Assembly: GCF_022045235.1 (NCBI RefSeq)
Contig: NW_027266277.1
Span: 434,001 to 498,000, forward strand
Source: Haliotis cracherodii
Taxonomy: Eukaryota
Direction: 5' to 3'
DNA length: 64,000 nt
Under the pieces are notes generated by a model. The model did not search any database. It saw only the letters and a program-made list of their open reading frames with translations, and was not told the origin of the DNA. Shown in pieces: positions 26,221 to 63,290 of this stretch (position 1 is the first letter of the stretch; each line of letters begins with the position of its first letter). A program made the translations under genes and the position numbers.

Positions 26221-29200
26221 ATGAAGGCTCTTCTCGTGTTCACAGCCTTGGGAGTTGTGCTGGTAAGTTGACAAACAATGGCATTAATACGAGTTATGTA
26301 TCATGTCTGTATAGGTACCAATCACACCAATACACCATGTGGTAGACCAGGGCCCACTTGCACAAAGCGATCTTAGCGCTAAGACTATTGTAAGCCAATG
26401 CTAAAGTATGGGAGTTACGATCATCTTAGCGCTAAGATAGCTTTGTGCAAGTGGGCCCAGGTGTACTTCATCTGACAGGGGGCGGTCGGGTAGCCTAGTG
26501 GTTAAAGCGTTCGTTCGTCACGCCGAAGACCCGGGTTCGATTCCTCACATGGGTACAATGTGTGAAGCCCATTTCTTGTGTCCCCGGCCGTGATATTACT
26601 GGATTATTGCTAAAAGTGGCGTAAAACCAAACTCACTCACTCACTCATCCCACAGATGACAAGAAGACCGAAAGTCTGATTCATTCTTTTCATCTGTGTC
26701 TACCCTATTTCGTTTTAGGAGAATGTCACCAAAACGTTAAATCATTGAGTTTCTCTCAAGGTACAAGTTTTATTCGACATTTGTATAAACGTGGAGTGAG
26801 TGGGTGAGTTTGGTTTAACACCGCTTTTAACAGTATTCTAGTTGTATCACGGCGTGTCAGCTTGATATGGGATGAAAGCCCGAAGTGATGCAGGCCTCAG
26901 ACGTTTACCACTTTGGTGAAACCCACGGGTATGGTGCTGACAAATCTAGAAACATAATTTGGATTCGAACCCACTATCATAGGTTCTGACGTGTCCAAGG
27001 GCGGTCGGGTAGCCTAGTGGTTAAAGCGTTCGCTCGTCACGCCGAAGACCCAGGTTCGATTCCCGACATGGGTACAATGTGTGAAGCCCATTTCTGGTGT
27101 CCCCCGCCGTGATATTGCTGGAATATTGCTAAAAGCGGCGTAAAATCAAACTCACTCACTCACTCACTGATGTGTCCAAGGGACACAACTCTGGACAGCG
27201 AATTGCGGCGTCTTAGACGATTCGGTCACCCGCGCCTCCATGCACAAACTTTGTCCTAATGTTTTCTGACAAACAGGTTATATAAATCTGATAATGATTA
27301 CATTTAACCAAAGCACACAATTTGAGTGCATAACATGAATATATAGAATGAAATATAGGACATAACTCACCGTGTGTGTGGCACCGAGCGCAAGGACGTC
27401 AGATTCGCCATGTATGTAATTAGCCATGGTGACCCTCCCGAATGTAAATATATAGATTGTCAGTTATGACATAAACATGGTAGCAAAAACTTAAGTATGA
27501 TCTGCCATTCTATATCAACCAAGAAATATAATCGGGCGATCCGGGAGTCTCTTAGCAGCACGAGACACGCCACCCATTTCACCAGGTGTCATTACTGTCG
27601 TTGACGAGAGCTCTAAGCATGACAAGAGACGCCACCCATCTCAAATACCAGGTGTCATTACTGTCGTTGATGAGAGCTCTAAGCATGACAAGAGACGCCA
27701 CCCATCTCAAATACCAGGTGTCATTACTGTCGTTGATGAGAGCTCTAAGCAAGACAAGACACGCCACCCATCTCAAATACCAGGTGTCATTACTGTCGTT
27801 GATGAGAGCTCTAAGCATGACAAGAGACGCCACCCATCTCAAATACCAGGTGTCATTACTGTCGTTGATGAGAGCTCTAAGCAAGACAAGACACGCCACC
27901 CATCTCAAATACCAGGTGTCATTACTGTCGTTGATGAGAGCTCTAAGCAAGACAAGACACGCCACCCATCTCAGATACCAGGTGTCATTACTGTCGTTGA
28001 TGAGAGCTCTAAGCAAGACAAGACACGCCACCCATTTCAAACACCAGGTGTCATTACTGTCGTTGATGAGAGCTCTAAGCATGACAAGGGACGCCACCCA
28101 TCTCAAATACCAGGTGTCATTACTGTCGTTGATGAGAGCTCTAAGCAAGACAAGACACGCCACCCATCTCAAATACCAGGTGTCATTACTGTCGTTGATG
28201 AGAGCTCTAAGCATGACAAGAGACGCCACCCATCTCAAATACCAGGCGTCATTACTGTCGTTGATGAGAGCTCTAAGCAAGACAAGACACGCCACCCATC
28301 TCAAATACCAGGTGTCATTACTGTCGTTGATGAGAGCTCTAAGCAAGACAAGACACGCCACCCATTTCAAACACCAGGTGTCATTACTGTCGTTGATGAG
28401 AGCTCTAAGCATGACAAGAGACGCCACCCATCTCAAATACCAGGTGTCATTACTGTCGTTGATGAGAGCTCTAAGCAGGACAAGACACGCCACCCATTTC
28501 AAACACCAGGTGTCATTACTGTCGTTGATGAGAGCTCTAAGCAAGACAAGACACGCCACCCATCTCAAATACCAGGTGTCATTACTGTCGTTGATGAGAG
28601 CTCTAAGCAGGACAAGACACGCCACCCATTTCAAACACCAGGTGTCATTACTGTCGTTGATGAGAGCTCTAAGCATGACAAGGGACGCCACCCATCTCAA
28701 ATACCAGGTGTCATTACTGTCGTTGATGAGAGCTCTAAGCAGGACAAGACACGCCACCCATTTCAAACACCAGGTGTCATTACTGTCGTTGATGAGAGCT
28801 CTAAGCAAGACAAGACACGCCACCCATCTCAAATACCAGGTGTCATTACTGTCGTTGATGAGAGCTCTAAGCAGGACAAGACACGCCACCCATTTCAAAC
28901 ACCAGGTGTCATTACTGTCGTTGATGAGAGCTCTAAGCAAGACAAGACACGCCACCCATCTCAAATACCAGGTGTCATTACTGTCGTTGATGAGAGCTCT
29001 AAGCAGGACAAGACACGCCACCCATTTCAAACACCAGGTGTCATTACTGTCGTTGATGAGAGCTCTAAGCATGACAAGGGACGCCACCCATCTCAAATAC
29101 CAGGTGTCATTACTGTCGTTGATGACAGCTCTAAGCAAGACAAGACACGCCACCCATTTCAAACACCAGGTGTCATTACTGTCGTTGATGAGAGCTCTAA

Positions 29201-32200
29201 GCATGACAAGACACGCCACCCATTTCAAACACCAGGTGTCATTACTGTCGTTGATGAGAGCTCTAGGCAGGACAAGACACGCCACCCATTTCAAACACCA
29301 GGTGTCATTACTGTCGTTGATGAGAGCTCTAAGCAGGACAAGACACGCCACCCATTTCAAACACCAGGTGTCATTACTGTCGTTGATGAGAGCTCTAGGC
29401 AGGACAAGACACGCCACCCATTTCAAACACCAGCTGTCAAACACGGGAACGTTGCCTCCTTCAACAACAACAAGAACAGCAACAGCAACCGTATTGTCTC
29501 TATAACATGCGTCACAGGCTCAAGCTAGTGAGTTGGGTTTAATGCCGCTTTTAACAGTAGTCCAGCTATATCACGGCGTGTTAGCTTAATGTGGGAGGAA
29601 AACCCGAAGTGATGGACCATCCATGCCCGTGCACACACGTAGCTGAGCAGCTGGCATATCGGACGGGTGATGCATCAGTGACATTTGTATATGGCAATCC
29701 CCGATAGCCTGGAAACTCTCCCGCGGTAATCATATTAGGGGACCCACGTAGATCCGGGTTAGAATTGGCCTTCAGCAACCCATGCTTGTAATAAGATTCG
29801 ACCAACGGTCATGTAAAAATTGTGACTTTTAACCAATCAAAAATCAACGTTAAATTCATATCAAAAGGCCAGTTTAAAAAAACCGTAAAACCTCAAAGCA
29901 GATTTAGAAGTCACCCAGGTCAAAACCTTGATTTGGAAGATGGGCTGGTAACTGATATACTTCCCATCTGGGTTTAATCGAGGTTGTCAGGAACCTAGTG
30001 CAATATAGGGTATTGTGGTGATAGGTTTATAATTCTGTTTACACACTGAAACAGTTTGAAGAATGATTTTGGATGATGAATAGAATCTAACCATTGCGAG
30101 TTTTAAACTTGTATCGAGTCATGTTGATGTTTTTTTTTTGTCAAAGACACTGGGGCGAGATTCCGTGTGTCCACCGGGTATCTTCCGGAAGCCAGGTCCC
30201 GTGAATATCCGGGTTAAAATTGGTCTTTAGCTACCCATGCTTGTCATAAGAGCTGACTAAGCTTGCCATCAGAGGCGACTAACGGGATCGAGTGGTCAGA
30301 TCCTCTGACTTGATTGATGCATATCATCGTAACCGAATTGCGTAGATCGCTGTTCATGCTGTCAATCACTGGATTTTCTGTTCCATATTCGATAATTTAC
30401 AGACACGCCGTTATATAGCAGGAGTAATGCTGAGTGCGGCATTTACCAAGAAACAAAGAAGTGATTATGCATAATAAAGAACTATTTATATTCAGGGAAT
30501 GAGTTAGGTCCCTTAAATTGTTAGGAGAAGTTAGGAGATGCCCTCTCTACAAAGACCTGAGAGGGGAACTAAATTCATCACCCGGATTTGCTATGCACCC
30601 ACTATCGCTAAAAATACCATTAAATCATCCAGAGCCCTTTGCAAAAATTATCTCTAATTTCATCCACAAAATGTTCAGGCAAAGAAAATCTGCATCTCCT
30701 CCCTAACAATATAATCATAGCAATATTTGTATTCTGTTTTGTATGTCAATGTTTTAATTAGTCATGTTCATGTTTTGTACCCTGCCCCCTGTGGGTGTTT
30801 ATGTACAATAAATATTATTCTTCTTCTTCTACATATATATCAATATACATAGGGGGTTACAGCGAAGTTTTAAACGTCTGAGGCCTGCATCACTTCGGGC
30901 TTTCCTCTCGCATTAGGCTGACACTGGAATATATGTTAAAAGCGGCGTTAAACCCAATTCACTCACTCAGTCACTCAGTCACTCACTCACTTACTCTCAC
31001 CCACCCACCCACCCACCCATCCTCACTCACTCACTGACTCACTCTCACCCATCCATCCACCAACTCACTCACTCACTCACTCACTCGCTCACTCACTCAG
31101 GTTAGATCTGACCACTAATGTGTCAGTCGACCAACAGATGATCGGGAATGCAAGATGTCGTCTAAACGTACTGCTTCTTTGCATTAGATATCCCTTGTTT
31201 GATGAAGGCTTGTCTCATTATATATTAATATTGATATCATATTTCAGGCGCAGATTGTGTACTACCATCCAGAACTCGTCCATGGCTACTCGATGGAGTA
31301 TCACAGCTACGCTGTATGTGCTTTATCATATTTCTCATCAGGGAAAAATCATTTTTGGTTCATATTCATGTTCATTCCTCCCTCGTTATAATGCCCCTCG
31401 TTATAAAGCCAAGTTGTAATCAGAACGGATTTCTGCCATATGAATATAGTGCCACCCAGGTTATTATGCCACCCTGGTTATAAACCCACCCTGGATATAG
31501 TCCAATCATGGATATAACCCCACCCTGAATAAAGTTTCACACTGGTTATAACTCCACCCTAGATATAATCCCACCCAGGTTGTAGTTTAACCCTGGTTAT
31601 AATGCCACCCTGGATATAACCCCACCCTGGTTATAACCCCACCCTGGTTATAATCCCACCCTGGTTATAGTTTCACTCTGGATTTAACCACACCCTGGTT
31701 ATAGGTTAACCCTCGATATAATGCCACCCTGGTTGTAGTTTAACCTTGGATATAATCCAACCCTGGTTGTAGTATCACCCTGGATATAATCCCACCCTGG
31801 TTATAACCCCACCCTGGTTTTGTTTCACCCTGGATATAATCCCGCCCTGGTTATAACCCCACCCTGGATATAATCCCACCCTGGTTGTAGTTTCACCCTG
31901 GATATAATCCAACCCTGGTTGTAGTTTCACCCTGGATATAATCCCACCCTGGTTGTAGTTTCACCCTGGATATAACCCCACCCTTGATATAATCCCACCC
32001 TGGATATAATCCCACCCTGGATATAATCCCACCCTGGATATAATCCCACCCTGGTTATAGTTTCACCCTGGATATCATCCCCCCCTGGTTATAGTTTCAC
32101 CCTGGATATAATCCCACCCTGGTTGTAGTTTCACCCTGGATATAATTCCACCCTGGTTGTAGTTTCACCCTGGATATAATCCCACCCTGGTTATAATCCC

Positions 32201-34211
32201 ACCATGGATATAATCCCACCCTGGTTATAATCCCACCCTGGATATAATCCCACCCTGGTTGTAGTTTCACCCTGGTTATAATCCCACCCTGGATATAATC
32301 CCACCCTGGTTATAATCCCACCCTGGATATAATCCCACCCTGGTTATAATCCCACCCTGGATATAATCCCACCCTGGTTATAATCCAACTCTGGATATAA
32401 CCCCACCCTGGTTATAATCCCACCCTGGATATAATCCCACCGTGGTTATAACCCCACCCTGGTTATAGTTTCACCCTGGATATAATGCCAGCCTGGATAT
32501 AATCCCACCCTGGATATAATCCCAATGCCAATTCCCTCTTCTAAATCAGCAAACTAACTGTATTGATCTCAGTTTGTTTCACAGCTAATCCCCACACAGA
32601 GACACATTCACTTTCTTTAAATAACAAACAATTAGAGATAATAACTTCTTATATAAGCAAAGATAAACTGACATGTAATGTAGATATGTATATACAGTAT
32701 CAGTAAGGTTCTGTTTTCATCTCGCTGGTTACATTTTCTGCATTATATCGAGGGAGGACGGTACGCTGAAACTCAATTACGTTGACCGGATATTCCGGAC
32801 ACCCCATACTCCGGACACTGGGAACGTCTTTATATACACATAAAATACCCATGATTCGTTAGTCCTAAATTTGGACCGGAATATTCTATTCGGAATTGTA
32901 CCATCAGGCTTTGCTATGTTGAATTATCATCCAAAACTTGGTCCACGTGATATCATTGGGTGACATATCTCCCTAGAGATCTTAACCATGACGTCAGAAT
33001 TGAATAACATCACTAATCTGTCTGCACTGAATGATGTTAGATGATAAATAAGAACCTCATACTTATGTCTTTTGATTCCAATGTTTTCAACACTTGTCGA
33101 TAAATGTTTCAAATTCCTAGACAAGACTCGGATTTGCTCTCAGAAGACACTTTGGGGGTTTCTGAATATCACTTGAAACTAAAATAATTCTTTAATCGTC
33201 ACCGGTATTGGATTGAAGAAGATTATTATAAAGCATAAATATATCAGACATTACAGTTTATTGTATTTATAAATGAAAGCACGACAGGAAACCGACTGAT
33301 TCATGTAAGATAATAAAGACTCTATATTTCAGGACATCATCGTTGTCAGGAACGCTACTGCTTGCTACATCGTCGACGTCTCCGCCGGCCTCGAGGGCGA
33401 CCTGAGACAAAGCACTACGAGAGCAAAGATAGAGGTATAAAATTGAAATGTGCGACCATTTGTAACCATGTATCTTACTGATGCTAGTTGCTTCTCAGAG
33501 CTGCCGAGATGCAGTGTGCGTGGATTCATCCCTTGTGGCATCTTTGATCTGTAAGGGTTATAATTGTTCACGTGAATATACGTGCCCGACCAGTGTACCC
33601 CTGGACTTCTATCCCACCCACCCACCAACTCACCCACTCACCCACTCACCCACTCACTCACCCACCCTACCACTCACTCATTCACTCATATCAGCCACCC
33701 ACTCACTCATTCACCACATACCCAACCACCCACCCACTCACCACATGCCCACCACTCACTCACTCACCACACACACACACACACACACACACTCACTCAT
33801 CCAGCCACTCACTCACCACGTACCCACCCACTCACTCATAGCATACACCCACTCACTCATTCACCACAAACCCACCCACCCACTCACTCACCACATACCC
33901 ACCACTCACTCACTCACCATACACAGACTCACTCACTCATCCAGCCACTTACTCGCTCACCCACTCACTCACTCATTAATAATCCTTTGAAATCATATCC
34001 CTATTTTACAATCAAACACTCCTCCCTATGATATAAAAGTACATCAAGTGTTGTATTATTTCAGGAGGAAATCTACAACCAAATGATGAGTCACAATGGA
34101 GAGGTCGTGTCCTCCATCGACAAGATCCGACACGAGATCCAGGACATCCGTGCTATAGTCGAGTGTTTTCGCCACAATGTCTATCAGATCAAGTACATGC
34201 CCTCAACATAG
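26221..34211 (+). CDS. Gene B: secreted 118-aa paralog; exons 26221-26262, 31248-31313, 33333-33434, 34065-34211
   Basis: MKALLVFTALGVVL|AQIVYYHPELVHGYSMEYHSYA|DIIVVRNATACYIVDVSAGLEGDLRQSTTRAKIE|EEIYNQMMSHNGEVVSSIDKIRHEIQDIRAIVECFRHNVYQIKYMPST*. GT-AG phase-0 introns; AATAAA at 34222-34227. Confidence 0.92.
26351..26457. mobile_element. PIF/Harbinger-like MITE
   Basis: TIR GGCCCACTTGCACAAAGC with a 3-bp CAG TSD. A relative lies at 15066-15171. Confidence 0.75.
26478..26647 (+). mobile_element. SINE family A (gene B intron 1)
   Basis: Full copy. Confidence 0.88.
26795..27238. mobile_element. SINE family B (minus) with nested SINE family A (plus, about 27000-27168)
   Basis: The family B sequence is interrupted; TSD CTGAYGTGTCCAAGG flanks the family A copy. 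Confidence 0.85.
27550..29435. repeat. 66-bp tandem array, about 28 highly similar units (gene B intron 1)
   Basis: Unit CCAGGTGTCATTACTGTCGTTGATGAGAGCTCTAAGCAWGACAAGASACGCCACCCATYTCAAAYA. Confidence 0.97.
30500..30830 (+). mobile_element. LINE 3' end fragment
   Basis: CPLYKDLR...IISNFIHKMF*, then AATAAA and a (TTC)n tail. Confidence 0.5.
31450..32525. repeat. 17-bp minisatellite AATCCCACCCTGGATAT inside a TIR element (about 31375-32763)
   Basis: Tandem units flanked by CCTCCCTCGTTATAATGC and GCATTATATCGAGGGAGG. Confidence 0.92.
33615..33975. repeat. Compound (ACTC/ACCC)n microsatellite
   Basis: Low-complexity sequence. Confidence 0.9.
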
Positions 34212-34384: not shown

Positions 34385-36112
34385 TCACCCCAACCACCAC
34401 TTCCACACAAACACATACAACACAATACACACAATACACCCTTACACACACAATACACCCCTACACAAACAATACACCCCTACACACCCATCACATACAC
34501 ACACACAATACACACACATCGCACCCCTACACACACATCACACCCCTACACACCCATCACATACACACACACAATACACCCCTCCATACACATCACACCC
34601 TACACACACATCACACCCCTACACACACAAAACACCCCTCCACACACATCACACCCTACACACACATCACACCCCTACACACCCATCACACACACACACA
34701 CAATACACCCCTACATACACATCATATACACACACAATACACCCATACTACACATATCCTACCTCTACACACACAATACACCCCTACACACCTATCATAT
34801 ACACACACAATACACCCATACTACACATATCCTACCTCTACACACACAATACACCCCTACACACCATCATGTACACACACAATACACCCCTACATACACA
34901 TATCCTACCTCTACACACACAATACACTCCTGCACACCCATCATATACACACACAATACACCCCTACACGCACATATCCTACCTCCATACACACAATACA
35001 CCCCTACATACACATATCCGACCTCTACACACACAATACACCCCTACATACACATCACATACACACACAATACACCCCTACACACACATCACATACACAC
35101 ACAATACACCCCTACATACACATCACATACACACACAATACACCTCTACACACACATCACATACACACACAATACACCCCTACGTACACATATCCTACCT
35201 CTACACACACAATACACCCCTACATACACATCACATACACACACACAATACACCCCTACACACACATCACATACACACACAATACACCCCTACATACACA
35301 TATCCTACCTCTACACACACAATACACCCCTACACACATCACATACACACACAATACACCCCTACATACACATATCCTACCTCCACACACACAATACACC
35401 CCTACATACACATATCCGACCTCTACACACAATACACCCCTACACTCACATCACATACACACACAATACACTCCTACATACACATATCCTACCTCTACAC
35501 ACACAATACACCACTACACACACATCACATACACACACAATACACCCCTACATACACATATCCTACCTTTACACACACAATACACCACTACATACACATA
35601 TCCTACCTCTACACACACAATACACCCCTACATACACATATCCGACCTCAACACACAATACACCCCTACACTCACATCACATACACACACAATACACCCC
35701 TACATACACATATCCTACCTCTACACACACAATACACCACTACACACACATCACATACACACACAATACACCCCTACATACACATATCCTACCTCTACAC
35801 ACACAATACACCCCTACATACACATATCCTACCTCTACACACACAATACACCCCTACACACACATCACATACACACACAACTCACCCCTACATACACATA
35901 TCCTACCTCCACACACACAATACACCCCTACATACACATATCCGACCTCTACACACACAATAGACCCCTACACACACATCACATCACACACACACACCCC
36001 ACACACACATACACCACATCCCTACATTGATGCGACAGGCACACATCACACATTAACACACACACATCACACCCTTACACTCCCACACCCAACACTCATA
36101 CACACAAACCAC
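34385..36112. repeat. CA-rich compound minisatellite ending at an assembly gap
   Basis: Units such as ACACACAATACACCCCTAC. Confidence 0.93.
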
Positions 36113-36260
36113 NNNNNNNNNNNNNNNNNNNNNNNNNNNNNNNNNNNNNNNNNNNNNNNNNNNNNNNNNNNNNNNNNNNNNNNNNNNNNNNNNNNNNNNN
36201 NNNNNNNNNNNNNNNNNNNNNNNNNNNNNNNNNNNNNNNNNNNNNNNNNNNNNNNNNNNN
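36113..36260. other. Assembly gap (N run)
   Basis: Run of Ns. Confidence 1.
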
Positions 36261-46677: not shown

Positions 46678-47487
46678 GTACACACACAAACACGTATAAC
46701 AACTTACGCACACACAAACACGTGCAAAAACTCACGCACGCGCACACAAACACACACAGACACACAAACACGTGTAACAACTCACGCACACACACAAACA
46801 CTTGTAACAACTCACGCACACACACAAAATCGTAATGACTCACTAACACACAAACACGTGTAACAACTCACGCACACACACAAACACGTGTACCGACTCA
46901 AGCACACACAAATACTTGAAACAACTCACGCACACACAAACACGTGTAACAACTCACGCACAAATGAATACTTGTACCAACTCACGCACACACAAACACG
47001 TGTAACAACTCACGCACACATAAATACTTGTACCAACTCACGCACACACAAACACGTGTAACAACTCACGCACAAACAAAAACACATGTAACAACTCACG
47101 CACACACACAAACACGTGTAACAACTCACGCACACACAAACACTTGTAACAACTCACGCACACACACAAACACTTGTAACAACTCACGCACACACAAACA
47201 CGTGTAACAACTCATGCACACACAAACACTTGTAACAACTCACGCACACACACAAACACTTGTACCAACTCACGCACACACAACACGTGTAACAACTCAC
47301 GCACACACAAACACTTGTAACAACTCACGCACACACACAAACACGTGTAACAACTCACGCACACACAAACAGTTGAAACAACTCATGCATACACAAACAC
47401 GTGTAACAACTCACGCACAAACAAAAACACATGTAACAACTCACGCACACACACAAACACGTGTACCAACTCACGCACACACAAACA
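46678..47487. repeat. Minisatellite, 28-30 bp unit CACACACAAACACGTGTAACAACTCACG
   Basis: Direct tandem repetition. Confidence 0.93.
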
Positions 47488-48679: not shown

Positions 48680-51600
48680 ATGAAGGCGGTCTTTGCTCTC
48701 GCGCTCTTTGGGTTTGTTGTGGTAGGATTTCTGTCTCATTCTCAAATCATACATAATGACTATAGTAGCACTGGGGCACATGCAGAGTTGCGTCCCTTAG
48801 TCGAATGAGGATCCGCTAATCATGTATTCAAATCACTGTTACGCCTTGATTATGATCCATAGTTTTCCAGCCGTGCTGGTAGGTTTCACCAGAGTGGTTT
48901 GTTTGTTTGTTTGTTTGTTTCTATGTTGTTTAACGCCGCACTCAGCAATATTCCAGCTATATGACGGAGGTCTGTAAATAATCGAGTCTGGACCACACAA
49001 TCCAATGATTGATATGAGTATCGATCCACGCAATTGGGATACGATAACATGCATCAACCAAGTCAGCGAGCCTGACCACCCGATTACCTTAGTCGCCTCT
49101 TACGACAAGCATAGTCGCCTTATTGCGATAAGCATGGGTTGCTGAAGACATATTCTACCCGGGATTTCACGGGTGTCACCAGAGTGGTAAACGTCTAGAC
49201 CTTTTGACGCCTGATATGACTGAAATCCTGCTAAATGTGCATAAGAAAACTTCCAACTTTAGGAAAAAGAAAACAGGTTTACTGCACACAGCGACGGTTC
49301 CATGTAGCTTTCACACTCGCTGGAGTATTTTGTCTGAAATAAAATTTTGTTTTGTTTTTAGGCCCAGCATCCCAATAATTACAACCGTGATCGAATCCAT
49401 GGCTACACATTTGAATATCACTCATACGCTGTAAGTATAAGTCTACTTGGAGGTATTCCACACGTTGCTTTTTAGGCGGTCAGTGTATTTCCAGCCTGCT
49501 TTCCTGGGTAGGTTGCGCTTGCGCTACACTCAGACTAGCGCAAGCGCAGCCTATCCACGGAACCTGACTGATGTCTTTCCCGATTTTGTAAAAAGCACAC
49601 TTATTGTGAACGACTTGGAACGTTACTATCCTTTCCTGCTTCGGGATTGTACAATAGTAACATATTGGTAAATGGAAATACGACCAAGTGACCATCTCCA
49701 ACTCAACTTCTCGTCTTACAGACTCAAGTCATTTGGTTCTCGGTCTTTCCAATGCTATGAACTCATAAAGCAATAAGCACCACATCTGTGCAGACTTACA
49801 TGTGTATCCTGTTTAGTTGGCTTCATGTCCCATTGGCTTCCACCTATGTGTTTTCTGTCCATGCTGTGACAGTATTATCCTTCTGTTGTCATTACCTACT
49901 CATGTTATCCCACTCATGGATGCAGTTGTGTGTTGAATGGTAAAACTGTATTGTATTTTTGTTCATATAACTAGGTTTTAGAATTACATCTCTTGACATC
50001 AACAATAATGTTAACTTCTTTGAAGCCTGATATTTTAATGTTTGTTTGTTGTTTAACGTCGTACTCAGCAATATTTCAGCTATATGACGGCGGTCTGTAA
50101 ATAATCGAGTCTAGACCACACAGTGATTAATATCATGGCCATCGATCGATGCAATTGGGATACAATGACATGAATCATCAATCAAGTCACCTGACCACCC
50201 GATCCGTTAGTCGCCTTTTACGACAAGCGTTGCCAACTATTACGACAAGCATGGGTTGCTGCAGACCTTTTCTAACCCTGATCTTCACCAATCTCATTAA
50301 AAACCCTGATCTTCGCCAATCTCATTAAAATCAGATCTTAGTCCTCGCTATCGCTAAACAAAGATCTGAGGACATCCCATTACGGGTCACGTCAGAACGA
50401 CCTTTCATCCGACCAATCAGACCGTCGCTTACCAAATCGTATAAGTGACAGTCGGAATGTGTTTTCAAATCATGCAACCTCGAAAACGTTAACACTGGGT
50501 ATTCCGTACGACAGTTACGGCCCATACGACTGATTTCGTCAAAATTATCGTCTATCTCTCGCTTCCGTGGGATAAACATTTGAATGGAGGAGGCGTTGCA
50601 CAGTACGTGGGAAGCACTGCCATACAATCTCAACCATATATAAGACATTCCGGAATGTTCGTTTGTTCAGTTTTCAAAATATTAATCGAGAACTGTGTCA
50701 ACATACTTTTCAAGCGTTGTCTGAAATGGAACTCACTCGGTTGAAACGAGTGCCGTAAAGCTCGAGAAAGCTGCTTTCCTATTGGCTGATGTCGACTTCT
50801 TGTTAGTCATTTCAGTGGCCGGTCAAAGTTCGCGAAAGGTCGTCCTGACGTGACCCGTAATGGGATCTTTGTTTAACGGCAGCGAGAACTTAGATCAGAT
50901 TTTCATGAGATTGGATGTTCACGGGTCTAGTATTTTAATGACTTCACGCACATGTCTCCTCCGGTATTTTAATTACTTCACGCGTGTGAGTTCTCCGGGG
51001 GTTTATTTTAAAACATTTATTTTGGTTTTAGCCAAAAAATATGTTGTTAGATAAAAGCGACAAAACCGTTTCAATCATCATATGAAATATCTATTGTACG
51101 ATTCCGACTAAATCATAATCATGAGTTTAGGAATAACTATCAATTAGTGATGATACCACGTGTTCGCGAAAAGGTGATCGTTTCCTGACACCCCCACAAA
51201 CACATGCAAAGGCAAGTCAAGTGTTCTGAAAAAGACGGAAACACGTATGACTAAAGTGAAAGCTAGAAGTTAGAGGCCGACTGTTTGATATTAATAACTA
51301 TATATTGATAACTAATGGGGTGACGTTTCCGCTTCAAGACAATCGTGCAAAACAATTCCTTGGAAACCACAGCACATCATTAAACCCAGCAAATTGGGTG
51401 AAAGGTCTGGTGATAAAAATGTTTGCTCGTCACGCTTAATTTTCGGGCTCGATTCCCCATATGGCTACAATGTGTGAAGCCCCAGTCAGGTGTCCCCCTG
51501 CTAAAAGCGACGTAAAACCATACTCACTCCAACAAGTCAAGCGAAAAGGTTCCCCAAAACAAATTGACAACCTCAAGTCTAGTGGATAGACTGTCTGCCA

Positions 51601-52972
51601 GGAGAGCAGAAAGACGGCGGTTCGATCCCTGGCCGCGTCAAACTAAAAGGGGTTAAAATATTGTACTTGCTTGACGCTCAGCATTAGGTTTGTTTGTTTT
51701 GTTTGTTTGTTTGTTGTTTAACGCCACACTCAGCAATATTCCAACTATATGACGGCGGTCTGTAAAAAAATGGAGTTTGGACCAGACAATCCAGTGATTG
51801 ACATCATGAGCATTGATCCTCGCAATTGGGATACGATGACCTGCATCAACCAAGTAAGCGAGCCTGACCACCTGATCCCGTCAGTCGCCTCTTACGACAA
51901 GCATAGTCGCCTCTTACGGCAAGCATGGTTGCCTGAGGCCTATTCTACCCCAGATCCTCACGGGTCCTCGGCATTAGGGACTAAAACAAGGACTGGTCGG
52001 CTCGGAGTCCGTATAGTGTGTCTGAGTGGGCTTAAACTGAGTGAGAAACAGGCATTAGCCAAGATTAGAACAAGCAGGCATACACAGACACACTTATCTT
52101 TTTGATTTACTTTCAGGATTTACTGGTAGTCACTAACACCAGCACCTGCATCCTGGTTTCCCTCCCGGGCAAGGATGCTGTCATGGGTGACCTCCAGCAA
52201 CGCTACGCAATTGAAGTGAGGCACCCCTTCAACACCACTTAACACCCTTTAACACCAACAAACACTCATCAACACCCCACAACACCCATCAACACCCCAC
52301 AACACCCATTAACAAGCCTCAAAATCAGCCAACACCCCACAACACCCATCAACACCCCACAACACCCATCAACACCCCACAACACCCATCAACACCCCAC
52401 AACACCCATCAACACGCCACAACACCCATCAACACGCCACAACACCCAACAACACCCCACAACACCCATCAACACTCATCATTCCTAAGCATAGTCGCCT
52501 TTTACGGCAAGCATGGGTTTCTGAAGACCTATTCTGAACCGGGTCTTCTCGGGTCTGCTGGAAGTAAAAAGGAGATCAAACATTTGAACATCTCCAATAA
52601 TTGGCACACCAGTTTAATACATGCATTTCTCTACAAATCTTTACCAAATGGTATTTCCAGGTGTTCAAAAAAGGGCCTGTACCCTACGTTATCTTTCGGG
52701 GAAATAAGTTGCGCCCCTTCGGGATGATATGATCCTATGATCGTGGGCTCGAATCCATCATTATGATGACCAGCACCATGCGGGGTAAAACCTCATTCAC
52801 TCACTCACTCATTCCACAGGACAAAGTCTACGCCCAAATCACGTCCGGCCAGGGGGAACATCGTACCAGCCTCTCCCAAGTCCGCCAGGACTATCACGAC
52901 ATCCGGGCAGTGTTCGAGTGCTTCAGAAAGACTGTCTACGAACTAACATACTCAGCAGCCACTTCAAAATAA
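48680..52972 (+). CDS. Gene C: secreted 120-aa paralog; exons 48680-48721, 49362-49430, 52117-52215, 52820-52972
   Basis: MKAVFALALFGFVV|AQHPNNYNRDRIHGYTFEYHSYA|DLLVVTNTSTCILVSLPGKDAVMGDLQQRYAIE|DKVYAQITSGQGEHRTSLSQVRQDYHDIRAVFECFRKTVYELTYSAATSK*. TATAAAA at about 48623; AATAAA overlaps the stop codon. Confidence 0.92.
48895..49174 (-). mobile_element. SINE-like family C nested in a family B remnant (gene C intron 1)
   Basis: TSD TCACCAGAGTGGT. Confidence 0.85.
50322..50909. mobile_element. MITE, same family as 37395-37933, inserted in a family C SINE
   Basis: Colinear with 37395-37933; TIRs present. Confidence 0.8.
52230..52480. repeat. 20-bp minisatellite AACACCCCACAACACCCATC (gene C intron 3)
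   Basis: Direct tandem repetition. Confidence 0.9.
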
Positions 52973-53954: not shown

Positions 53955-56900
53955 TTTGCCGTGCAGCTCGTGTAGTTGATAAGGACATGGCAACCCGTGC
54001 AGCTCGTGCATATGATAATGACATGACAATCCATGACATCGTGTGTATGTCATTATCAAATACACGAGCTGCACCAAATCAGATATTTGATATCAAAAGG
54101 ATTTTTTAAGTTACTTGAAAAATAATAATTAGCTAATCACATATAGGAAGAGTGTATTATGATAATGACACGGCAGCCCGTGCAGCTCGTGTATTTGACA
54201 ATGACATGTCAGCCCGTGCAGCTCGTGTATATGATAATGACATGACAGCCCGTGCAGCTCGTGTATATGATAATGACATGTCAGCCCGTGCATCTCGTGT
54301 ATATGATAATGACATGACAGCCCGTGCAGCTCGTGTATATGATAATGACATGGTAACACGTGCAGCTCGTGTATATGATAAGTACAGCCCGTGCAGCTCG
54401 CGTATATGATGATGACATGGCAACACGTGCAGCTCGTGTCTATGATAGTGACATGGCAACACGTGCAACTCGTGTATTTGACAATGACATGGCAACACGT
54501 GCAGCTCGTGTATATGATAATGACATCACAACCCGTGCACCTCGTGTATATGCTAATGGCAGCCCATGCAGCTCGTGTATATGCTAATGGCATGTCAGCC
54601 CGTGCAGCTCGTGTATATGATAAGGAAAACCCGTGCACCTCGTGTATATGCTAATGACATGACAGCCCGTGCAGCTCGTGTATATGATAATGACATGACA
54701 ACCAGTGCAGCTTGTGTATATGCTAATGGCATGTCAACCCGTGCAGCTGGTGTATATGATAGTGTCATGACACACCTTGGAACTCGTGTGTATGATAGTG
54801 ACATGACACCCAGTGCAGCTCGTGTGTATGGTAGTGACAGCCCGTGTATATGATAATGACATGGCAACCAGTGCAGCTCGTGTATATGATAATGACAGCC
54901 CGTGTATATGATAATAACATGGCAACACGTGCAGCTCGTGTATATGATAATGACAGCCCGTGTATATGATAATGACATGGCAATACGTGCAGCTGGTGTA
55001 TATGATAAGGACAATCCGTGCAGCTCGTGTATATTCTAATGGCATGTCAGCCCATGCAGCTCGTGTATATGATAGTGACATGACCGCCCGTGCAGCTCGT
55101 GTATATGATAATGACATGGTAGCCTGTGCAGCTCGTGTATATGATAATGACATGGCAACACGTGCAGCCCGTGCAGCTCGTGTATATGATAAGGACAACC
55201 CGTGCACCTCTTGTATTTGACAATGACATGGCCGCCTGTGCAGATCGTGTATATGATAATGACATGGCAACACGTGCATCCCGTTTATATGATAATGACA
55301 ACCCGTGCAGCTCGTGTATATGATAAGGATATGGCAACACGTGCAGCTAGTGTACATGTATATCATAAGGACAGCCCGTGCAGCTCGTGTATATGATAGT
55401 GACATGGCAACACGTGCAGCTCGTGTATTTTGACAATGCCATGACAGCCCGTGCAACTCGTGTATTTGACTATGACATGGCAGCCCTTGGAGCTCGTGTA
55501 TATGATAATGACATGACAACCAATGCAGCTCGTGTATATGATAATGACGGCCATCCGTGCAGCTCGTGCATATGATAATGACATAGCAACACGTGAAGCT
55601 CGTGTCTATGATAATGGCAGCCCGTGCAGCTCGTGTATATGATAATGGCATGTCAGCCCGTGCAGCTCGTGTATATGATAATGACATGGCAACACGTGCA
55701 GCTCGTGTCTATGATAATGGCATGTCAGCCCATGCAGCTCGTATATATGATAGTGACATGACAGCCCATGCAGCTCGTGTATTTGACAATGCCACTGCAA
55801 CACGTGCAGCTCGTGTATATGATAATGGTAGCCCGTGTATATGATAATGACATGGCATTACGTGCAGCTCGTGTATATGATAAGGACAACCCGTGCAGCT
55901 CGTGTAAATGCTAATGGCATGTCAGCCCGTGCAGCTCGTGTATATGATAATGGTAGCCCGTGTATATGATAATGACATGGCATTACGTGCAGCTCGTGTA
56001 TATGATAAGGACAACCCGTGCAGCTCGTGTATATGCTAATGGCATGTCAGCCTGTGCAGTTCGTGTATATGATAATGACATCACAGCCCGTTCAGCTCGT
56101 GCATTTGAAAATGGCAGCCCGTGCAGCTCGTATTAATGATAGTGACATGGCAACACGTGCAGCCCGTGCAGCTCGTTTATATGATAAGGTAAACCCGTGC
56201 ACCTCGTGTATAGGAGAGTGACATGACAGCCCGTGCAGCTCGTGTATATGAAAATGACATGACAACCAGTGCAGCTCGTGTATATGCTAATGGCATGTCA
56301 ACCCGTCCAGCTCGTGTATATGGTGGTGACATGACACCCCGTGCAGCTCGTGTGTATGATAGTGATATGACACCCCGTGCAGCTCGTGTATATGATAAGG
56401 ACATGGCAACACGTGCAGTTCGTAAATATTATAATGACAGCCCGTTTATATCATTATGACATGGCAATACGTGCAGCTGGTGTATATGATAAGGACAATC
56501 CGTGCAGCTCGTGTATATGCTAATGGCATGTCAGCCCGTGCAGCTCGTGTATATGATAGTGACATGACCGCCCGTGCAGCTCCTGTATATGATAATGACA
56601 TGGCAGCTCGTGTATATGATATTGACATGGCAACACGTGCAGCCCGTGCAGCTCGTGTATATGATAAGGACAACCCGTGCACCTCGTGTATATGCAAATG
56701 GCATGACAACCCGTGCACCTCGTGTATATGCAAATGGCATGACAACCCGTGCAGCTCGTGTATATGCAAATGGCATGACAACCCGTGCAGCTCGTGTATA
56801 TGATAAGGACAACCCGTGCACCTTGTGTATATGATAATGACATGACAACCCATGCAACTCGTGTATATGATAATGACGGCCACCCGTGCGGCACGATTAT

Positions 56901-57262
56901 ATGATAATGACATGGAAATACGTGCAGCTCGTGTATATGATAATGGCAGCCCGTTTATATCATAGTGACATGACAACCCGTACAGCTTGTGTATGTGGTA
57001 ATGACAGCCCGTGCAGCTCGTGTATATGCTAATGGCATGTCAGTCCGTGCAGCTCGTGCATGTGACAATGACAGCCCTTGCAGCTCGTGAGTATGATAAT
57101 GACAGTAGTGCAGCTCGTGTATATGATAATGATAGCCCGTGCAGCTCGTGTATATGATAATGACAGTCCGTGCAGCTCGTGTGTATGATAATGATAGCCC
57201 TTGCAGCTCGTGTATATGATAATGTCAGCCCGTGTAAATAATAGTGATATGGCTACCCGTGT
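53955..57262. repeat. Complex minisatellite, variable 30-40 bp unit CCCGTGCAGCTCGTGTATATGATAATGACATG
   Basis: About 3.3 kb of tandem variants between genes C and D. Confidence 0.95.
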
Positions 57263-58348: not shown

Positions 58349-61300
58349 ATGAGAGGTCTTTCTTTTGCAGCCATTTTTCGGTACTCAGCTGTGAGTAAAA
58401 CGTTTTTTCACCCATCAATTCTTGATATTTTAATCTCTGTATTTGACATCTAAAGGCCTTTATAAAGTTGCTTGAAAAATAGTAATTTATAATTCTCATG
58501 CAGACAGAGTGTGTTAGGAGTGAGGGCCGCCTCCGCGCAGCGTCCATCCGCCGCGTCATACCGAAAGATGGTACTTGTTGTTACCCTGCCTGGCGCTCGA
58601 CATAAGGGGCTCAAACAAGGACTGGTCGACTCGGAGTCAGTATACTGTGTCTGAGAGGGGTATTCATGTTAAACTGCGGCATGATATCTCATAGGGAAGC
58701 TCTATAAAATCGCCATTAGCCCGGACGTGTACAAGCGCACGCACAAACAAACACACGCACACGCACGTCGCTACATGACTGCAATAATCTTGAACGCGAC
58801 GTTAAACCCCATATCACCTCGCTGCCTCACCTATTAGGAGTGAGTAAAATTGTTATACATCGGGTCGCCCAAATTATCACAACTATATGAAAAAAGGCCA
58901 CAATTTCTATATTTTCGAATATACTTTTAATACAATTGAGCATTATTTAGGGACTGATCATTTATTATAGGAGCGAGGGGGGCATGAGAGATTGCTTCAT
59001 GTATGTGGGTGGGCCACGACAAATTGTCACATACAATGGGAGGGGTGTGTGAGTATGGGAAATTATGATAGTCTTGAGACCAATTTCACCGACCCCACCC
59101 CATAATATATGACTAGCCCCTCTCCTCACCTTTGACCCGTGAAAATTCGGGTTAGAAAAACTGTTTAGCAACCCATGCATGCTGTAAAAGTCAACTGACT
59201 ATGCTTGTTGGAGGGGGCGACTAACGAGAGCGGGTGGTCAGGCTCGCTGATTTGGTTGATGTAAGTCATCGTAACCCAAATACGTGGATTAATGGTGTCA
59301 AACACTGAATTGTCTGGTCCAGACTCGATTATTTACAGACCGCCGTCATATAGCTGAAATATTGCTGAGTGCGGCGTTGAACAAAACACAATCAAACAAC
59401 CAAACAAATAAACAAACAAACCTCACCTTGCCGTTTGGGCACGCTGACATACAATCAGTCAGTTCGTAAATGCAACCGTGTTCTTATTTGTAGAAACTAA
59501 ATACAAGAAGGGGTCTTGACAGACCTATTCTCCCCCGAGATCTCCAAGAGGCGTTTTCATTTTGATCGACTCTTGTTGTGAAATGTTGATTTTCATTGTA
59601 TGACAGCCATGGATTTTCCTTTGTAGGCCTTCATTTTCACCATTACATCATTTAATGAACTGTACATGGGCTACCGATTTGAATATCACGCACCGAACGT
59701 AAGTTAAACAAAACATTTTACTTATATCATTATAATATTAAGCATGTAATAATCATAGCAAAGTGTTTTCTTGTACCATGTTTACAGGGTCTACTTGTGG
59801 AACACACTGATCTATCATGTTACATTGTACCATGTTTACAGCGTCTACCTGTGGTACACACTGATCTATCATGTTACCTTGTACCATATTTACAGGGTCT
59901 ACCTGTGGTACACACTGATCTATCATGTTACCTTGTACCATGTTAACAGGGTCTACCTGTGGTACACACTGACCTATTATGTTATCTTGTACCATGTTTA
60001 CAGGGTCTACTTGTGCTACACACTGATCTATCATGTTACCTTGTACCATGTTTACAGCGTCTATTTGTGGAACACACTGATCTATAATGTTACATTGTAC
60101 CATGTTTACAAGGTCTACTTGTGGTACACACTGATCTATCATGTTACCTTGAACCATGTTTACAGGGTCTACCTGTGTAACACACTGATCTATCATGTTA
60201 CCTTGTACCATGTTTACAGGGTCTACTTGTGGTACACACTGATCTATCATGTCACCTTGTACCATGTTTACAGGGTCTACTTGTGGAACACACTGATCTA
60301 CAATGTTACCTTGTCCCATGTTTACAGTGTCTACTTGTGCTGAAAAACTGATCTATCATGTTACCTTCTGCCATGTTTACAGGGTCTACTTGTGGTACAC
60401 ACTGATCTGTCATGTTACATTGTGCCATGTTTACAGGGTCTAATTGTGGTAAACACTGATCTATCATGTTACATTGTACCATGTTTACAGGGTCTCCTTG
60501 TGGTACACACTGATCTATCATGTTACCTTATAGCATGTTTACAGGGTCTACTTGTAGAATACACTGATCTATCATGTTACATTGTACCATGTTTACAGGG
60601 TCTACGTGTGGTACAAACTGATTTATCATGTTACCTTGTACCATGTTTGCACTGACTTCTTTTGATACACACCGATCTATTATGTTACCTTGTATCATGT
60701 TCACAGGGTCTACTTGCGGAACAAACTGATCTATTATGTTACATTGTACCATGTTTACAGGATCTACTTGTGGTACACACTGATCTATCATGTTACCTTC
60801 TACCATGTTTTACAGGGTCTACTTGTGGTACACACTGATCTATCATGTTACATTGTACCACGTTTACAGGGTCTCCTTGTTTCACACACTGGTCGATCAT
60901 GTTACCTTGTACCATGTTTACAGGGTCTACTTGTGGAACACACTGATCTATCCTATTACCTTGTTCTATGTTTACAAGGTCTACTTGTGGTTCGCACTGA
61001 TCTATCATGTCACCTTGTACCATGTTTACAGGGTCTACTTGTGGTACACACTGATCTACCATGTTACATTGTACCATGTTTACAGGGTCTACTTGTGGTA
61101 CACACTGATCTACCATGTTACATTGTACCATGTTTACAGGGTCTACTTGTGGTACACACTGATCTATCATGTTACATTGTACCATGTTTACAAGGTCTAC
61201 TTGTGGTTCGCACTGATCTATCATTTTACGTTTTATCATGTTTACAGGGTCTACTTTTGATACACAACAACCTCAAATGTTTCCTTGTCCACGTCGATCT

Positions 61301-62349
61301 CCGCCTCAGCCAGGCGTTCAACAATCAAACTGAGAAAGACAGGATTAAGGTAAGAGAGTGAGTGAGTATATTCTACTTCCCATGTGTTACCACAGCAAGC
61401 AGATAGATATCGAGACTTAGCAGACCAGTCGTCGATGAAATGAGCAACAAACGTCGGCTTTACACAATCAGCAGATCCTGCTGCTCCTAATGCATACCAC
61501 CCAATCCCCATTTAGCACGGAAACCCACCGGAATGCGAGTGTCTGTGAGGATAATATTCATTTATACTGAACAAAAAATATCACGAATAATTTGGGGAAT
61601 ATTTTATGACGGCGGTCGAATCTGGCCCAGACAATCCAGTGATTGATATCATGAGCATCGATCCACGCAATTGGGATACGATGACATGCATCAACCAAGT
61701 CAGCGAGCCTGACTACCCGATCAAGTAAGTCGCCTCTTGCGACAAGCACAGTCACCTTTTACGGAAAGCATGGATTGCTGAAGGCCTATTCTACCCCTGT
61801 TATAACCAGCATCATAACGTTATACCAGGCCCAATTTATTCGTATAATAACTTGGCTGGTTGGTTGGTTGGTTGGTTGGTTGTTTAACGCCGCACTCAGC
61901 AATATTCCAGCTATATGACGGCGGTCTGTAAATAATCGAGTCTGGACCAGACAATCCAGTGACTAATATCATGAGCATCGATCCACGCTATTGGGATCGA
62001 TGACATGCATCAACCAAGTCAGCGAGCCTGACCACCCGATCCCGTTAGTCGCCATTTACGACCAGCATAGTCACCTTATACGGCAAGCATGGGTTACTGA
62101 AGACCTGTTCTACCCCGGATCTTCACGGGTCACTTAGTAATTCTCTTTCGTTTCTATAAACTTTTTTCTCAGGATGACATACTGGCCATAATATCGGACG
62201 GAACTTCAGCCGTCAATGTGTCATCTGACGTCCTCCGTTACGACTACAGCGACTACCTGGCCGCATCCCAGTGCAGAGACCTCCAAGTCTACAAGCTCCC
62301 CTACACCTATGACACACAAGCTGGTGTGGAAATGACGACTGTCTACTAG
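58349..62349 (+). CDS. Gene D: divergent 130-aa paralog; exons 58349-58390, 59627-59698, 61248-61349, 62173-62349
   Basis: MRGLSFAAIFRYSA|AFIFTITSFNELYMGYRFEYHAPN|GLLLIHNNLKCFLVHVDLRLSQAFNNQTEKDRIK|DDILAIISDGTSAVNVSSDVLRYDYSDYLAASQCRDLQVYKLPYTYDTQAGVEMTTVY*. It keeps GYxFEYH, both Cys, a 42-nt exon 1 and a 102-nt exon 3. Exon 1 is the least certain. Confidence 0.85.
58525..58832 (+). mobile_element. SINE family D (gene D intron 1)
   Basis: TSD TTAGGAGTGAG. Confidence 0.8.
59765..61290 (+). repeat. 54-bp tandem array (about 28 units) derived from the gene D exon-3 acceptor and exon start
   Basis: Unit TTTACAG|GGTCTACTTGTGGTACACACTGATCTATCATGTTACCTTGTACCATG; the last unit is the real exon 3 boundary. 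Confidence 0.95.
61607..62130 (-). mobile_element. Tandem pair of family C SINEs (gene D intron 3)
   Basis: Inverted counterpart of 41391-41895, including the linker. Confidence 0.85.
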
Positions 62350-63016
62350 TCTCGGCTTAAAATCGGGATGATTGTTTACCCAAAGTGAGAACCGAATTTA
62401 AAAAGGAAAATATATTATTTTATTAATGTACCATCGTTATTGTTTGTGTTAAACTTTGAGGGTTTAGACGTGGGTGTCTTGACGAGATGACCAGATCTGG
62501 GATCTTTAAGGCTTCCATAGTCTGTCTTACAGTCCCTGATACAAATATATCAACTACAGCCCATGCAAGTCTATAATGTTTGGCAAGTCTAGATTACTGC
62601 AGTATCAGAAGAGAATCACTGGGCTCCCTTTTTATTATATTTTTATTAAGATAACTGAACAACTGGTTTTTTTTGTACGATATGTTCATTTCAGAGACTA
62701 TATGTTAGTCTAAGGCTTCCAGGTTGACAATGACTTCAGAGAAAACACCTATTTCCTTGCTGACGTCTTGAAATGCCGCCCGCCACCGGTCACAGTACAG
62801 AGAGCACTAGGACTTTGTGAAGCAAGTCCTCTACGCCTGGCCTGCAAGAGGTCTCCACTTGGTTCCAGCAGTTTCGAGTTTGTCTTCATAGCCTCCATAT
62901 CTGGGCTAGAAACTACCTCATGACCCTGTTGGAACCTTTCGTCAGCTTCATACAACTTACTCGAGGTACATTCAGTAACCAGGTAAACTGCCCAAAGCTG
63001 GGTGATTTTGGTGAGA

Positions 63017-63290
63017 CTCGTGAAGATCCGGGTTAGAATAGGTCTTCAGCAACCCTTGCTTGCCGCAAAAAGCGACTTTGCCTGTCGGAAGAATCGCCTT
63101 ACTGGATCGGGTGGTCAGGCTCGCTGACTTGGTTGATGCATTTCAACGTATCCCAATTGCTTGGATCGATGCTCATGATATCGATCACTGGATTGTTTGG
63201 TCCAGACTCGATTATTTACAGACCGCCGTCATACAGATGGAATATTGCTGAGTGCGGCGTTAAACAACAACAACAACAACAAAACAAAAG
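63017..63290 (+). mobile_element. SINE-like family C
   Basis: Full copy. Confidence 0.8.

What the first reader, a model, noticed from the sequence alone, without database searches (positions are those of the whole stretch)
59765..61349. Minisatellite built from a gene's own splice acceptor: about 28 stacked 3' splice sites in front of exon 3 of gene D
Seen: the 54-bp (18-codon) unit contains TTTACAG followed by GGT CTA CTT GTG GTA CAC ACT GAT CTA TCA TGT TAC MTT GTA = GLLVVHTDLSCY(I/L)V. This aligns without gaps to the true exon 3 start GLLLIHNNLKCFLV and to paralog starts DIIVVRNATACYIV and DLMLVRNADSCYLV. Each unit also has a branch-point-like CTGAT about 30 nt before the next AG. The last unit has the most T-rich tract (TCATTTTACGTTTTATCATGTTTACAG). 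Single-base insertions near 60345 and 60807 put the upstream units out of frame. Downstream of them the frame is open into exon 3 (ORF 60690-61361), with intact in-frame CAG acceptors ending at 60815, 60869, 60923, 61031, 61085 and 61139. The sites at about 60977 and 61193 are mutated to CAA. Inference: alternative acceptor choice could insert up to 8 copies of a Cys-containing 18-aa module, or divert transcripts to decay. Array length could therefore act as a splicing or expression dial.
Basis: partly seen in the sequence, partly recalled or inferred. Interest (0 to 1): 0.85.

Follow-up and report, generated by a model that had tools for sequence, protein, structure and literature searches.

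The report
Splice-acceptor "mirage" minisatellite in abalone gene
An intron of a small secreted-protein gene, very probably of the black abalone, consists almost entirely of 27 tandem copies of the gene's own intron-end/exon-start junction; this kind of repeat is already described ("mirage" minisatellite), and nothing I could test shows that the extra splice sites are used.

Summary
A 54-bp array of 27.7 copies lies at 59770-61266. Each unit copies the last bases of intron 2 plus the first ~45 bases of exon 3 of a four-exon gene (58349-62349). Its product is identical to RefSeq XP_071109373.1 of Haliotis cracherodii (130 aa). The unit occurs nowhere else in the 1.18-Gb genome.

Of the 27 intronic units, 23 keep CAG. 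Six of these are in frame and would add 2, 3, 4, 6, 7 or 8 modules of 18 aa. The other 17 run into stop codons.

The "splicing or expression dial" is not. The RefSeq models of two species use only the last acceptor. The acceptor AG is not conserved among units. The open frame has no weight, because the unit lacks stops in two of three forward frames.

The class is known: "mirage" minisatellites of amphioxus, and the mirror-image donor arrays of human F7 and IFI6. There the look-alike sites are silent, or only the one or two next to the exon are used. This scan has already reported the same kind of array on other DNA of this genome (four notes).

Verdict: a new member of a known kind, of modest interest.

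The parts
58349..58390 (+). Exon 1 of gene D: start codon plus 14 aa, the start of the signal peptide; donor GTGAGT
   Evidence: P0005 residues 1-14 map at 100%; sequence read; donor
59627..59698 (+). Exon 2 (24 aa, phase 0 at both ends); donor GTAAGT at 59699
   Evidence: P0005 residues 15-38 map at 100%; sequence
59699..59769 (+). The only non-repeated part of intron 2 (71 nt). Its last bases (59764-59769) already resemble the unit
   Evidence: the left flank aligns to the unit over 24 nt (22 of 24) up to the first CAG at 59787
59770..61229 (+). 27 intronic units of the 54-bp minisatellite: 23 with CAG, 3 with CAA (AG shifted by one base), 1 with CAC. Together with the intronic part of unit 28 they make up 95% of the 1549-nt intron 2
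60343..60343 (+). Extra G in unit 11; shifts the frame of everything upstream of it
   Evidence: (alignment of units)
60808..60811 (+). T-run with one extra T in unit 20; downstream of it the units are in frame with exon 3
60798..61229 (+). Units 20-27, in frame with exon 3. Six CAG look-alike acceptors (ending 60815, 60869, 60923, 61031, 61085, 61139) would add 8, 7, 6, 4, 3 or 2 modules of 18 aa
61213..61247 (+). Likely branch point (CTGAT, A at 61216), pyrimidine tract and authentic acceptor CAG (61245-61247). No AG lies between the branch point and the acceptor
   Evidence: the role of the motif is inferred
61248..61349 (+). Exon 3 (34 aa). Its first ~47 nt are homologous to the unit. In the model it encodes strands 40-44 and 48-53, with the conserved Cys49. 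Donor GTAAGA follows
62173..62349 (+). Exon 4 (58 aa plus stop codon), with the second conserved Cys

Best explanation
This is a 'mirage'-type minisatellite: a tandem array whose unit spans an intron/exon junction.

A 54-nt piece covering the end of intron 2 and the first ~45 nt of exon 3 of a small secreted-protein gene was duplicated in tandem. It then expanded upstream, by slippage or unequal exchange, to 27 copies, which now make up 95% of the intron. The copy still joined to the rest of exon 3 (acceptor at 61247|61248) is the one spliced. The 23 CAG-bearing copies upstream are look-alikes that are mostly or wholly silent.

SHOWN
- The anatomy of the array.
- That the unit is specific to this locus.
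- The homology of the unit to exon 3.
- That the only protein models on record use the last site.

INFERRED
- How the array arose.
- Why the last site wins: it is the only copy followed within 102 nt by a good donor (AAG|GTAAGA), which fits exon definition, and its tract has gained T's.
- That the array is near-neutral.
For: - Array.
- Locus-specific in 1.18 Gb.
- Exon 3 aligns to the unit over ~65 nt. Four paralogs share a 102-nt exon 3 in the same phase.
- P0005, identical to the four window exons, is RefSeq XP_071109373.1. The H. rufescens ortholog XP_048250722.1 also has 130 aa. The H. rubra and H. asinina orthologs have 132 aa without repeats.
- No conservation of the AG or of the frame within the array.
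- No GTRAG donor inside the array, so no pseudo-exons are expected.
- The window is 19.9% minisatellite in 12 arrays, so repeat birth is frequent here.
- The class is described, with splicing kept: PMC3087553, PMC3902484. Mirror-image donor arrays: PMC1557585.
Against: - No RNA reads or junctions were seen. RefSeq models are predictions, and I could not see what supports them.
- By local sequence the look-alikes are almost as good as the true site: the same seven bases before the exon, the same branch-point motif at -31, and 13-15 against 14 pyrimidines of 20. Some use of the nearest ones (61139, 61085, 61031, or AAG at 61194) is quite possible.
- In human IFI6 and CBS the two donor look-alikes nearest the exon are used.
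- The first acceptor (59787) keeps the native intron context and has the best tract.
Confidence: 0.75

Rival explanations
1. Several acceptors in the array are really used. The six in-frame ones give isoforms with 2-8 extra 18-aa modules, each a copy of a strand-turn-strand piece with two Cys. The others send transcripts to nonsense-mediated decay. Array length would then tune isoform mix or expression.
For: - 23 intact CAGs, each with a branch-point motif and a tract nearly equal to the true one.
- The period of 54 nt is 18 codons, and the last 8 units are in frame.
- Precedent: the proximal donor look-alikes in IFI6 and CBS are used.
Against: - No isoform on record among candidates of up to 231 aa.
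- AG and frame are not conserved beyond chance.
- A period divisible by 3 has a prior of one in three.
- An insertion would fall inside the beta-sheet core of the predicted fold, next to the conserved Cys49.
- Mirage arrays in amphioxus do not yield aberrant mRNAs.
Confidence: 0.12
2. The array is mildly or strongly harmful. Upstream acceptors, above all the first at 59787, which gives an 89-nt intron in native context, capture much of the splicing. That gives transcripts with early stops (first at 59944), so this allele of gene D would be a hypomorph on its way to becoming a pseudogene.
For: - The first acceptor has the best pyrimidine tract.
- 17 of the 23 CAG look-alikes lead to stops.
- The gene sits in a cluster of paralogs that could cover for a loss.
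Against: - All four exons are intact and the product is 95% identical to the H. rufescens product, so the coding sequence is maintained.
- No YTNAY motif lies 12-50 nt before 59787.
- Known mirages splice normally.
Confidence: 0.1
3. Assembly artefact or a chance resemblance. The array would be collapsed or expanded wrongly, or would be an unrelated intronic repeat that merely looks like the exon start.
For: Tandem repeats are hard to assemble. Only one haplotype was available to me.
Against: - The units differ by 6.4% on average, so they are individually recognisable.
- The genome matches in size a PacBio HiFi assembly with 37x coverage (PMC9709981).
- Unit 28 runs without a break into the exon at 41/54 identity, and the homology continues to ~61294.
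- 0 of 100 shuffles give any match to the unit core.
Confidence: 0.03

Closest known systems
'Mirage' minisatellites of amphioxus (Adh3, globin BflGb6 and BflGb9, troponin C, PGBD5)
   Same: - Tandem arrays whose unit spans an exon/intron boundary and repeats the splice signal.
- BflGb6 is the same type as here: the 3' end of the intron plus the 5' part of the exon.
- The terminal copy is the authentic junction.
- Edge units are the most diverged.
(PMC3087553; PMC3902484)
   Different: - Here the host is a mollusc.
- There are 27 copies, against 3-6 in BflGb6.
- The unit of 54 nt keeps the reading frame.
- The array fills 95% of the intron.
- Splicing, length polymorphism and somatic instability were tested in amphioxus but not here.
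Human minisatellites that repeat a splice donor (F7 intron 7, 37 bp; IFI6/6-16 intron 2; CBS intron 13; LMNB2; PDGF)
   Same: - The first monomer spans the exon/intron boundary, so identical look-alike sites follow the real one.
- Only the site next to the exon is used (F7, LMNB2, PDGF), or that site plus the two nearest look-alikes (IFI6, CBS).
(PMC1557585)
   Different: - These are the mirror image: donors after the exon, not acceptors before it.
- Acceptor choice involves the branch point and the pyrimidine tract, so the rule of selection need not be the same.
Tandem alternative acceptors (NAGNAG) and disease-causing duplications of 3' splice sites (from my own knowledge, not checked here)
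   Same: Two or more acceptors in a row compete, and in-frame choices add or remove residues.
   Different: Those are single duplications of 3 to a few tens of bases, not a 1.5-kb array. No use of the extra sites is shown here.
BRICHOS domain (Pfam PF04089; proSP-C structure 2YAD)
   Same: - The model of the gene product aligns best to 2yad_B: Z 7.6, rmsd 3.1 A, 76 of 79 residues. The BRICHOS monomer 8ovi follows at Z 5.2. The next, unrelated entry has Z 3.9.
- Two invariant Cys (49 and 106) and an invariant Asp55.
   Different: - No Pfam match even at E 10 and no PDB match by sequence.
- Z is under 8 and the Foldseek E-value is only 0.18.
- Call it BRICHOS-like, not a shown member.

Membership tests
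Mirage (splice-junction) minisatellite | Tandem array whose repeat unit spans an exon/intron boundary | tested here: met
   The unit is the last bases of intron 2 plus the first ~45 nt of exon 3
Mirage (splice-junction) minisatellite | The authentic junction is the terminal unit, continuous with the rest of the exon | tested here: met
   Unit 28 (61230-61283) runs into exon 3, which maps at 100% to XP_071109373.1
Mirage (splice-junction) minisatellite | The splice signal is repeated in the copies | tested here: met
   23 of 27 intronic units keep CAG, and 3 more keep a shifted AAG
Mirage (splice-junction) minisatellite | Regular splicing is kept and the look-alike sites are silent | not testable with these tools
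The RefSeq models of two species use the last acceptor, which fits but is not proof
Mirage (splice-junction) minisatellite | Length instability or polymorphism | not tested
   Only one haplotype of one individual was available
BRICHOS domain (PF04089) | Match to the Pfam profile | tested here: not met
   No match at E up to 10 for the single exons or for the full-length orthologs P0001 and P0003. PF04089 finds nothing in the window
BRICHOS domain (PF04089) | BRICHOS fold | tested here: inconclusive
   AF2 model with pLDDT 74. 2YAD is the top hit: Foldseek E 0.18-0.4; VIA Z 7.6 with 76 of 79 residues aligned, well above the next unrelated entry at 3.9 but under the cautionary Z of 8
BRICHOS domain (PF04089) | Two conserved Cys and one conserved Asp (from my own knowledge of the family) | tested here: inconclusive
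   C49, C106 and D55 are invariant in six sequences. The Asp lies after the first Cys, not before it as I recall for proSP-C

The most novel reading that the evidence does not exclude
The nearest in-frame look-alike acceptors (61139, 61085, 61031 and further up) are used at a real level. The gene would then make a ladder of secreted BRICHOS-like proteins with 2-8 extra Cys-bearing hairpin modules. Array length, varying among abalone, would set the isoform mix or the share of transcripts lost to decay. That would be the first splice-acceptor minisatellite shown to act on the product.
Probability: 0.1. Interest if true: 0.6.

Novelty: new member of a known kind. Interest (0 to 1): 0.3.

Why it matters
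Arrays of near-identical splice sites are natural experiments on how the spliceosome picks one site among many. The human donor arrays (F7, IFI6) were used in exactly that way.

This array offers 23 acceptor look-alikes with the same branch-point motif and an almost equal tract. Six of them are in frame. With RNA data from black abalone it would therefore give a clean test of acceptor choice.

It also adds to the signs that junction-spanning minisatellites are common outside lancelets. Taken alone, it does not change what is known.

Tried and rejected
- Spliced model: I searched the exons one by one, by reference. The full-length protein I used (P0005) came from the database and turned out to be identical to the four exons.
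- Family by sequence: no Pfam match. PF04089 against the own genome hit nothing in the window. A PDB profile search gave nothing.
- RNA structure that might hide the look-alike sites: rejected. The last units fold no better than shuffles (z -0.53).
- Selection on the array: neither the AG nor the branch-point block nor the frame is conserved beyond chance.
- Higher-order repeat: rejected overall, since identity is flat across lags. Units 23 and 27 do share CAA and a TTCGC variant four units apart.
- Internal donors that would make pseudo-exons: no GTRAG anywhere in the array.
- Dating the first duplication from amino-acid states: unresolved. The units share V-V and Y with H. rubra and H. asinina. 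The left edge of the array and unit 17 share states with the present exon (K-C-F and L-L-L-I-H).
- A resemblance between 59714-59731 and the T-rich tract at 61221-61238 (16 of 18): I did not test it against shuffles and I make no claim from it.
Full report
WHAT IS THERE

Tandem Repeats Finder reports one array at 59770-61266: period 54, 27.7 copies, 87% matches, no indels. I cut it unit by unit. There are 27 intronic units, on average 93.6% identical to the consensus. A 28th unit (61230-61283, 41 of 54 matching) holds the real acceptor and the start of exon 3. A 34-nt unit core with up to 3 mismatches occurs 23 times in the window and never in 100 shuffles.

- The two single-base insertions are an extra G in unit 11 near 60343 and an extra T in the run 60808-60811.
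- ORF 60690-61361 exists.
- The in-frame CAGs end at 60815, 60869, 60923, 61031, 61085 and 61139, and CAA stands at 60977 and 61193.
- A CTGAT motif lies 31 nt before almost every AG.

Four corrections.
- 23 units, not 28, keep CAG.
- The three CAA units still carry an AG one base on (AAG|G), out of frame.
- The last tract is not uniquely the richest in T. The first acceptor at 59787 has the same T count, more pyrimidines and the longest pyrimidine run.
- The open frame says little, because the unit has no stop in two of three forward frames and long ORFs also run on the minus strand.

THE GENE

I searched the exons one by one, by reference. A phmmer search of 1.84 billion proteins with exon 4 alone found P0001, an uncharacterized protein of Haliotis rubra. 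Searches with P0001 and with an alignment returned P0005, an uncharacterized 130-aa protein of Haliotis cracherodii.

P0005 maps at 100% identity to four window exons:
- exon 1, 58349-58390;
- exon 2, 59627-59698;
- exon 3, 61248-61349;
- exon 4, 62173-62346.

It is RefSeq XP_071109373.1. Its 90% cluster also holds XP_048250722.1 of H. rufescens, also 130 aa and 95% identical.

The genome (1,182,234,246 bases in 80 pieces) matches the published black abalone HiFi assembly (1,182,252,637 bases in 81 scaffolds; PMC9709981).

Intron 2 is 1549 nt. Only its first 71 nt are not repeat.

Three paralogs in the window have an exon 3 of the same 102 nt and the same phase, starting at 17809(-), 33333(+) and 52117(+). 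The acceptor position 61248 is therefore ancestral, and the array is derived from it rather than the reverse.

WHAT THE PROTEIN IS

Pfam finds nothing, neither in the single exons nor in the full-length orthologs. A PDB profile search by sequence also finds nothing.

An AlphaFold model of P0005, built on six family members (pLDDT 74), has four strands, then helices, then a last strand.
- Its best PDB matches are the six chains of the proSP-C BRICHOS domain 2YAD, with Foldseek E 0.18-0.4.
- VIA-align gives 2yad_B Z 7.6, rmsd 3.1 A and 76 of 79 residues aligned. A BRICHOS monomer (8ovi) follows at Z 5.2. The next, unrelated entry has Z 3.9.
- Two Cys (49, 106) and Asp55 are invariant.

I call it a small secreted BRICHOS-like protein, not a proven member. 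The part of exon 3 copied into the array encodes strands 40-44 and 48-53, with Cys49.

ORIGIN

The exon aligns to the unit from 61230 to about 61294, some 65 nt or 1.2 units. The left flank aligns to the unit over the 24 nt before the first CAG (22 of 24). So the array is a copy series of the junction, with the usual diverged edge units.

The unit is specific to this locus.
- All 23 genome-wide matches to the core (up to 3 mismatches) are inside the array, and the control pattern gives 0.
- BLAST with 271 bp of the array hits only the array.

The window is 19.9% minisatellite, in 12 arrays. Repeat birth is therefore frequent here, and one array seeded across a junction is not very surprising.

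When the first duplication happened stays open.
- The units read V-V and Y, as H. rubra and H. asinina do.
- The present exon and H. rufescens read L-I and F.
- Yet unit 17 shares the exon's L-L-L-I-H codons, and the left edge shares K-C-F.
- This may reflect exchange between the exon copy and the array, or parallel changes.

DOES IT DO ANYTHING

For each AG of the intron I translated the contiguous genomic DNA as far as the exon-3 donor.
- Six CAGs stay in frame and would add 2, 3, 4, 6, 7 or 8 modules of 18 aa.
- The other 17 CAGs, and the AAG and TAG sites, meet stops at 59944, 60085, 60178, 60349, 60653, 60836 or 61258.

By local sequence the look-alikes are nearly as good as the true site, and there is no GTRAG donor inside the array. 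What sets the last site apart is the good donor 102 nt downstream (AAG|GTAAGA) and three changes to T in its tract. That exon definition is what favours it is my inference.

I found no sign of selection for use of the copies.
- The G of the AG varies in 4 of 27 units, against a mean of 1.7 per column.
- Two indels and about four substitution stops fall in the upstream 19 units. Finding none in the last 8 units has a chance of roughly 0.1 by my estimate.
- The last units fold no better than shuffles (z -0.53).
- No longer isoform is on record among candidates of up to 231 aa.

WHAT IS KNOWN

Tandem repeats that span an exon/intron boundary were named "mirages" in amphioxus.
- They are reported for Adh3, troponin C, PGBD5 and globins.
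- BflGb6 is the same acceptor type as here.
- RT-PCR there suggests that regular splicing is not disturbed, although many copies keep the AG or GT (PMC3087553; PMC3902484).

Human genes carry the mirror image, donor arrays.
- In F7, LMNB2 and PDGF only the authentic site is used.
- In IFI6 and CBS the two nearest look-alikes are used as well (PMC1557585).

Four earlier notes of this scan describe the same kind of array at other loci of this genome, and they gave me the lead to the term. I checked the literature claim myself, but not their loci.

VERDICT

- The proposed origin is supported.
- The function is unsupported and, by analogy with the known cases, unlikely beyond minor use of the nearest copies.
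- It is a new member of a known kind, and a good natural test case for acceptor choice once RNA data are laid on it.

Noticed in passing
window 17708-17809(-), 33333-33434(+), 52117-52218(+), 61248-61349(+): Four paralogous genes in the window share a 102-nt exon 3 in the same phase. Matching exon-2 pieces lie near 18852-18872(-), 31272-31307 and 49401-49424. A matching exon 4 lies at 52817-52963. This looks like a tandem cluster of small secreted BRICHOS-like proteins, so far found only in Haliotis.
   Followed up: partly
window 52225-52475: A 20-bp array of 12.6 copies begins 7 nt after the donor of the paralog's exon 3 (exon end 52218). The unit does not contain the donor, so it sits against a junction without copying it.
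   Followed up: partly
whole window (234-1065, 3395-4155, 27549-29439, 31445-32524, 34404-36106, 46681-47487, 54152-57234 and others): 12 minisatellite arrays cover 19.9% of the 64 kb. A 36-bp array of about 90 copies ends 1.1 kb before the start codon of gene D. I checked only the arrays at 59770 and 52225 against exon junctions.
   Followed up: no
window 6138, 12782, 30239, 40801, 41431, 41750, 44929, 47557, 49090, 51883, 62046 (22-bp TRF hits); also 59150-59400, 61560-62110, 63000-63270: A dispersed repeat, carrying a 22-bp motif that TRF reports again and again, lies on both strands in introns 1 and 3 of gene D and throughout the window. It looks like a SINE- or MITE-like element.
   Followed up: no
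P0002: A 1179-aa protein built of about 13 tandem repeats matched the exon-4 peptide in 13 stretches (E 3.5e-16, 33% identity). Its source and its relation to this family are unknown.
   Followed up: no
window 60635-60688 (unit 17): Unit 17 has lost its AG (CAC). Its first half carries the same two base changes as the present exon 3 (codons for L-L-L-I-H), and its second half is array-like. This could be a trace of exchange between the exon copy and the array.
   Followed up: partly
window 36113-36260: A run of 148 N directly after the 34404-36106 repeat block.
   Followed up: no
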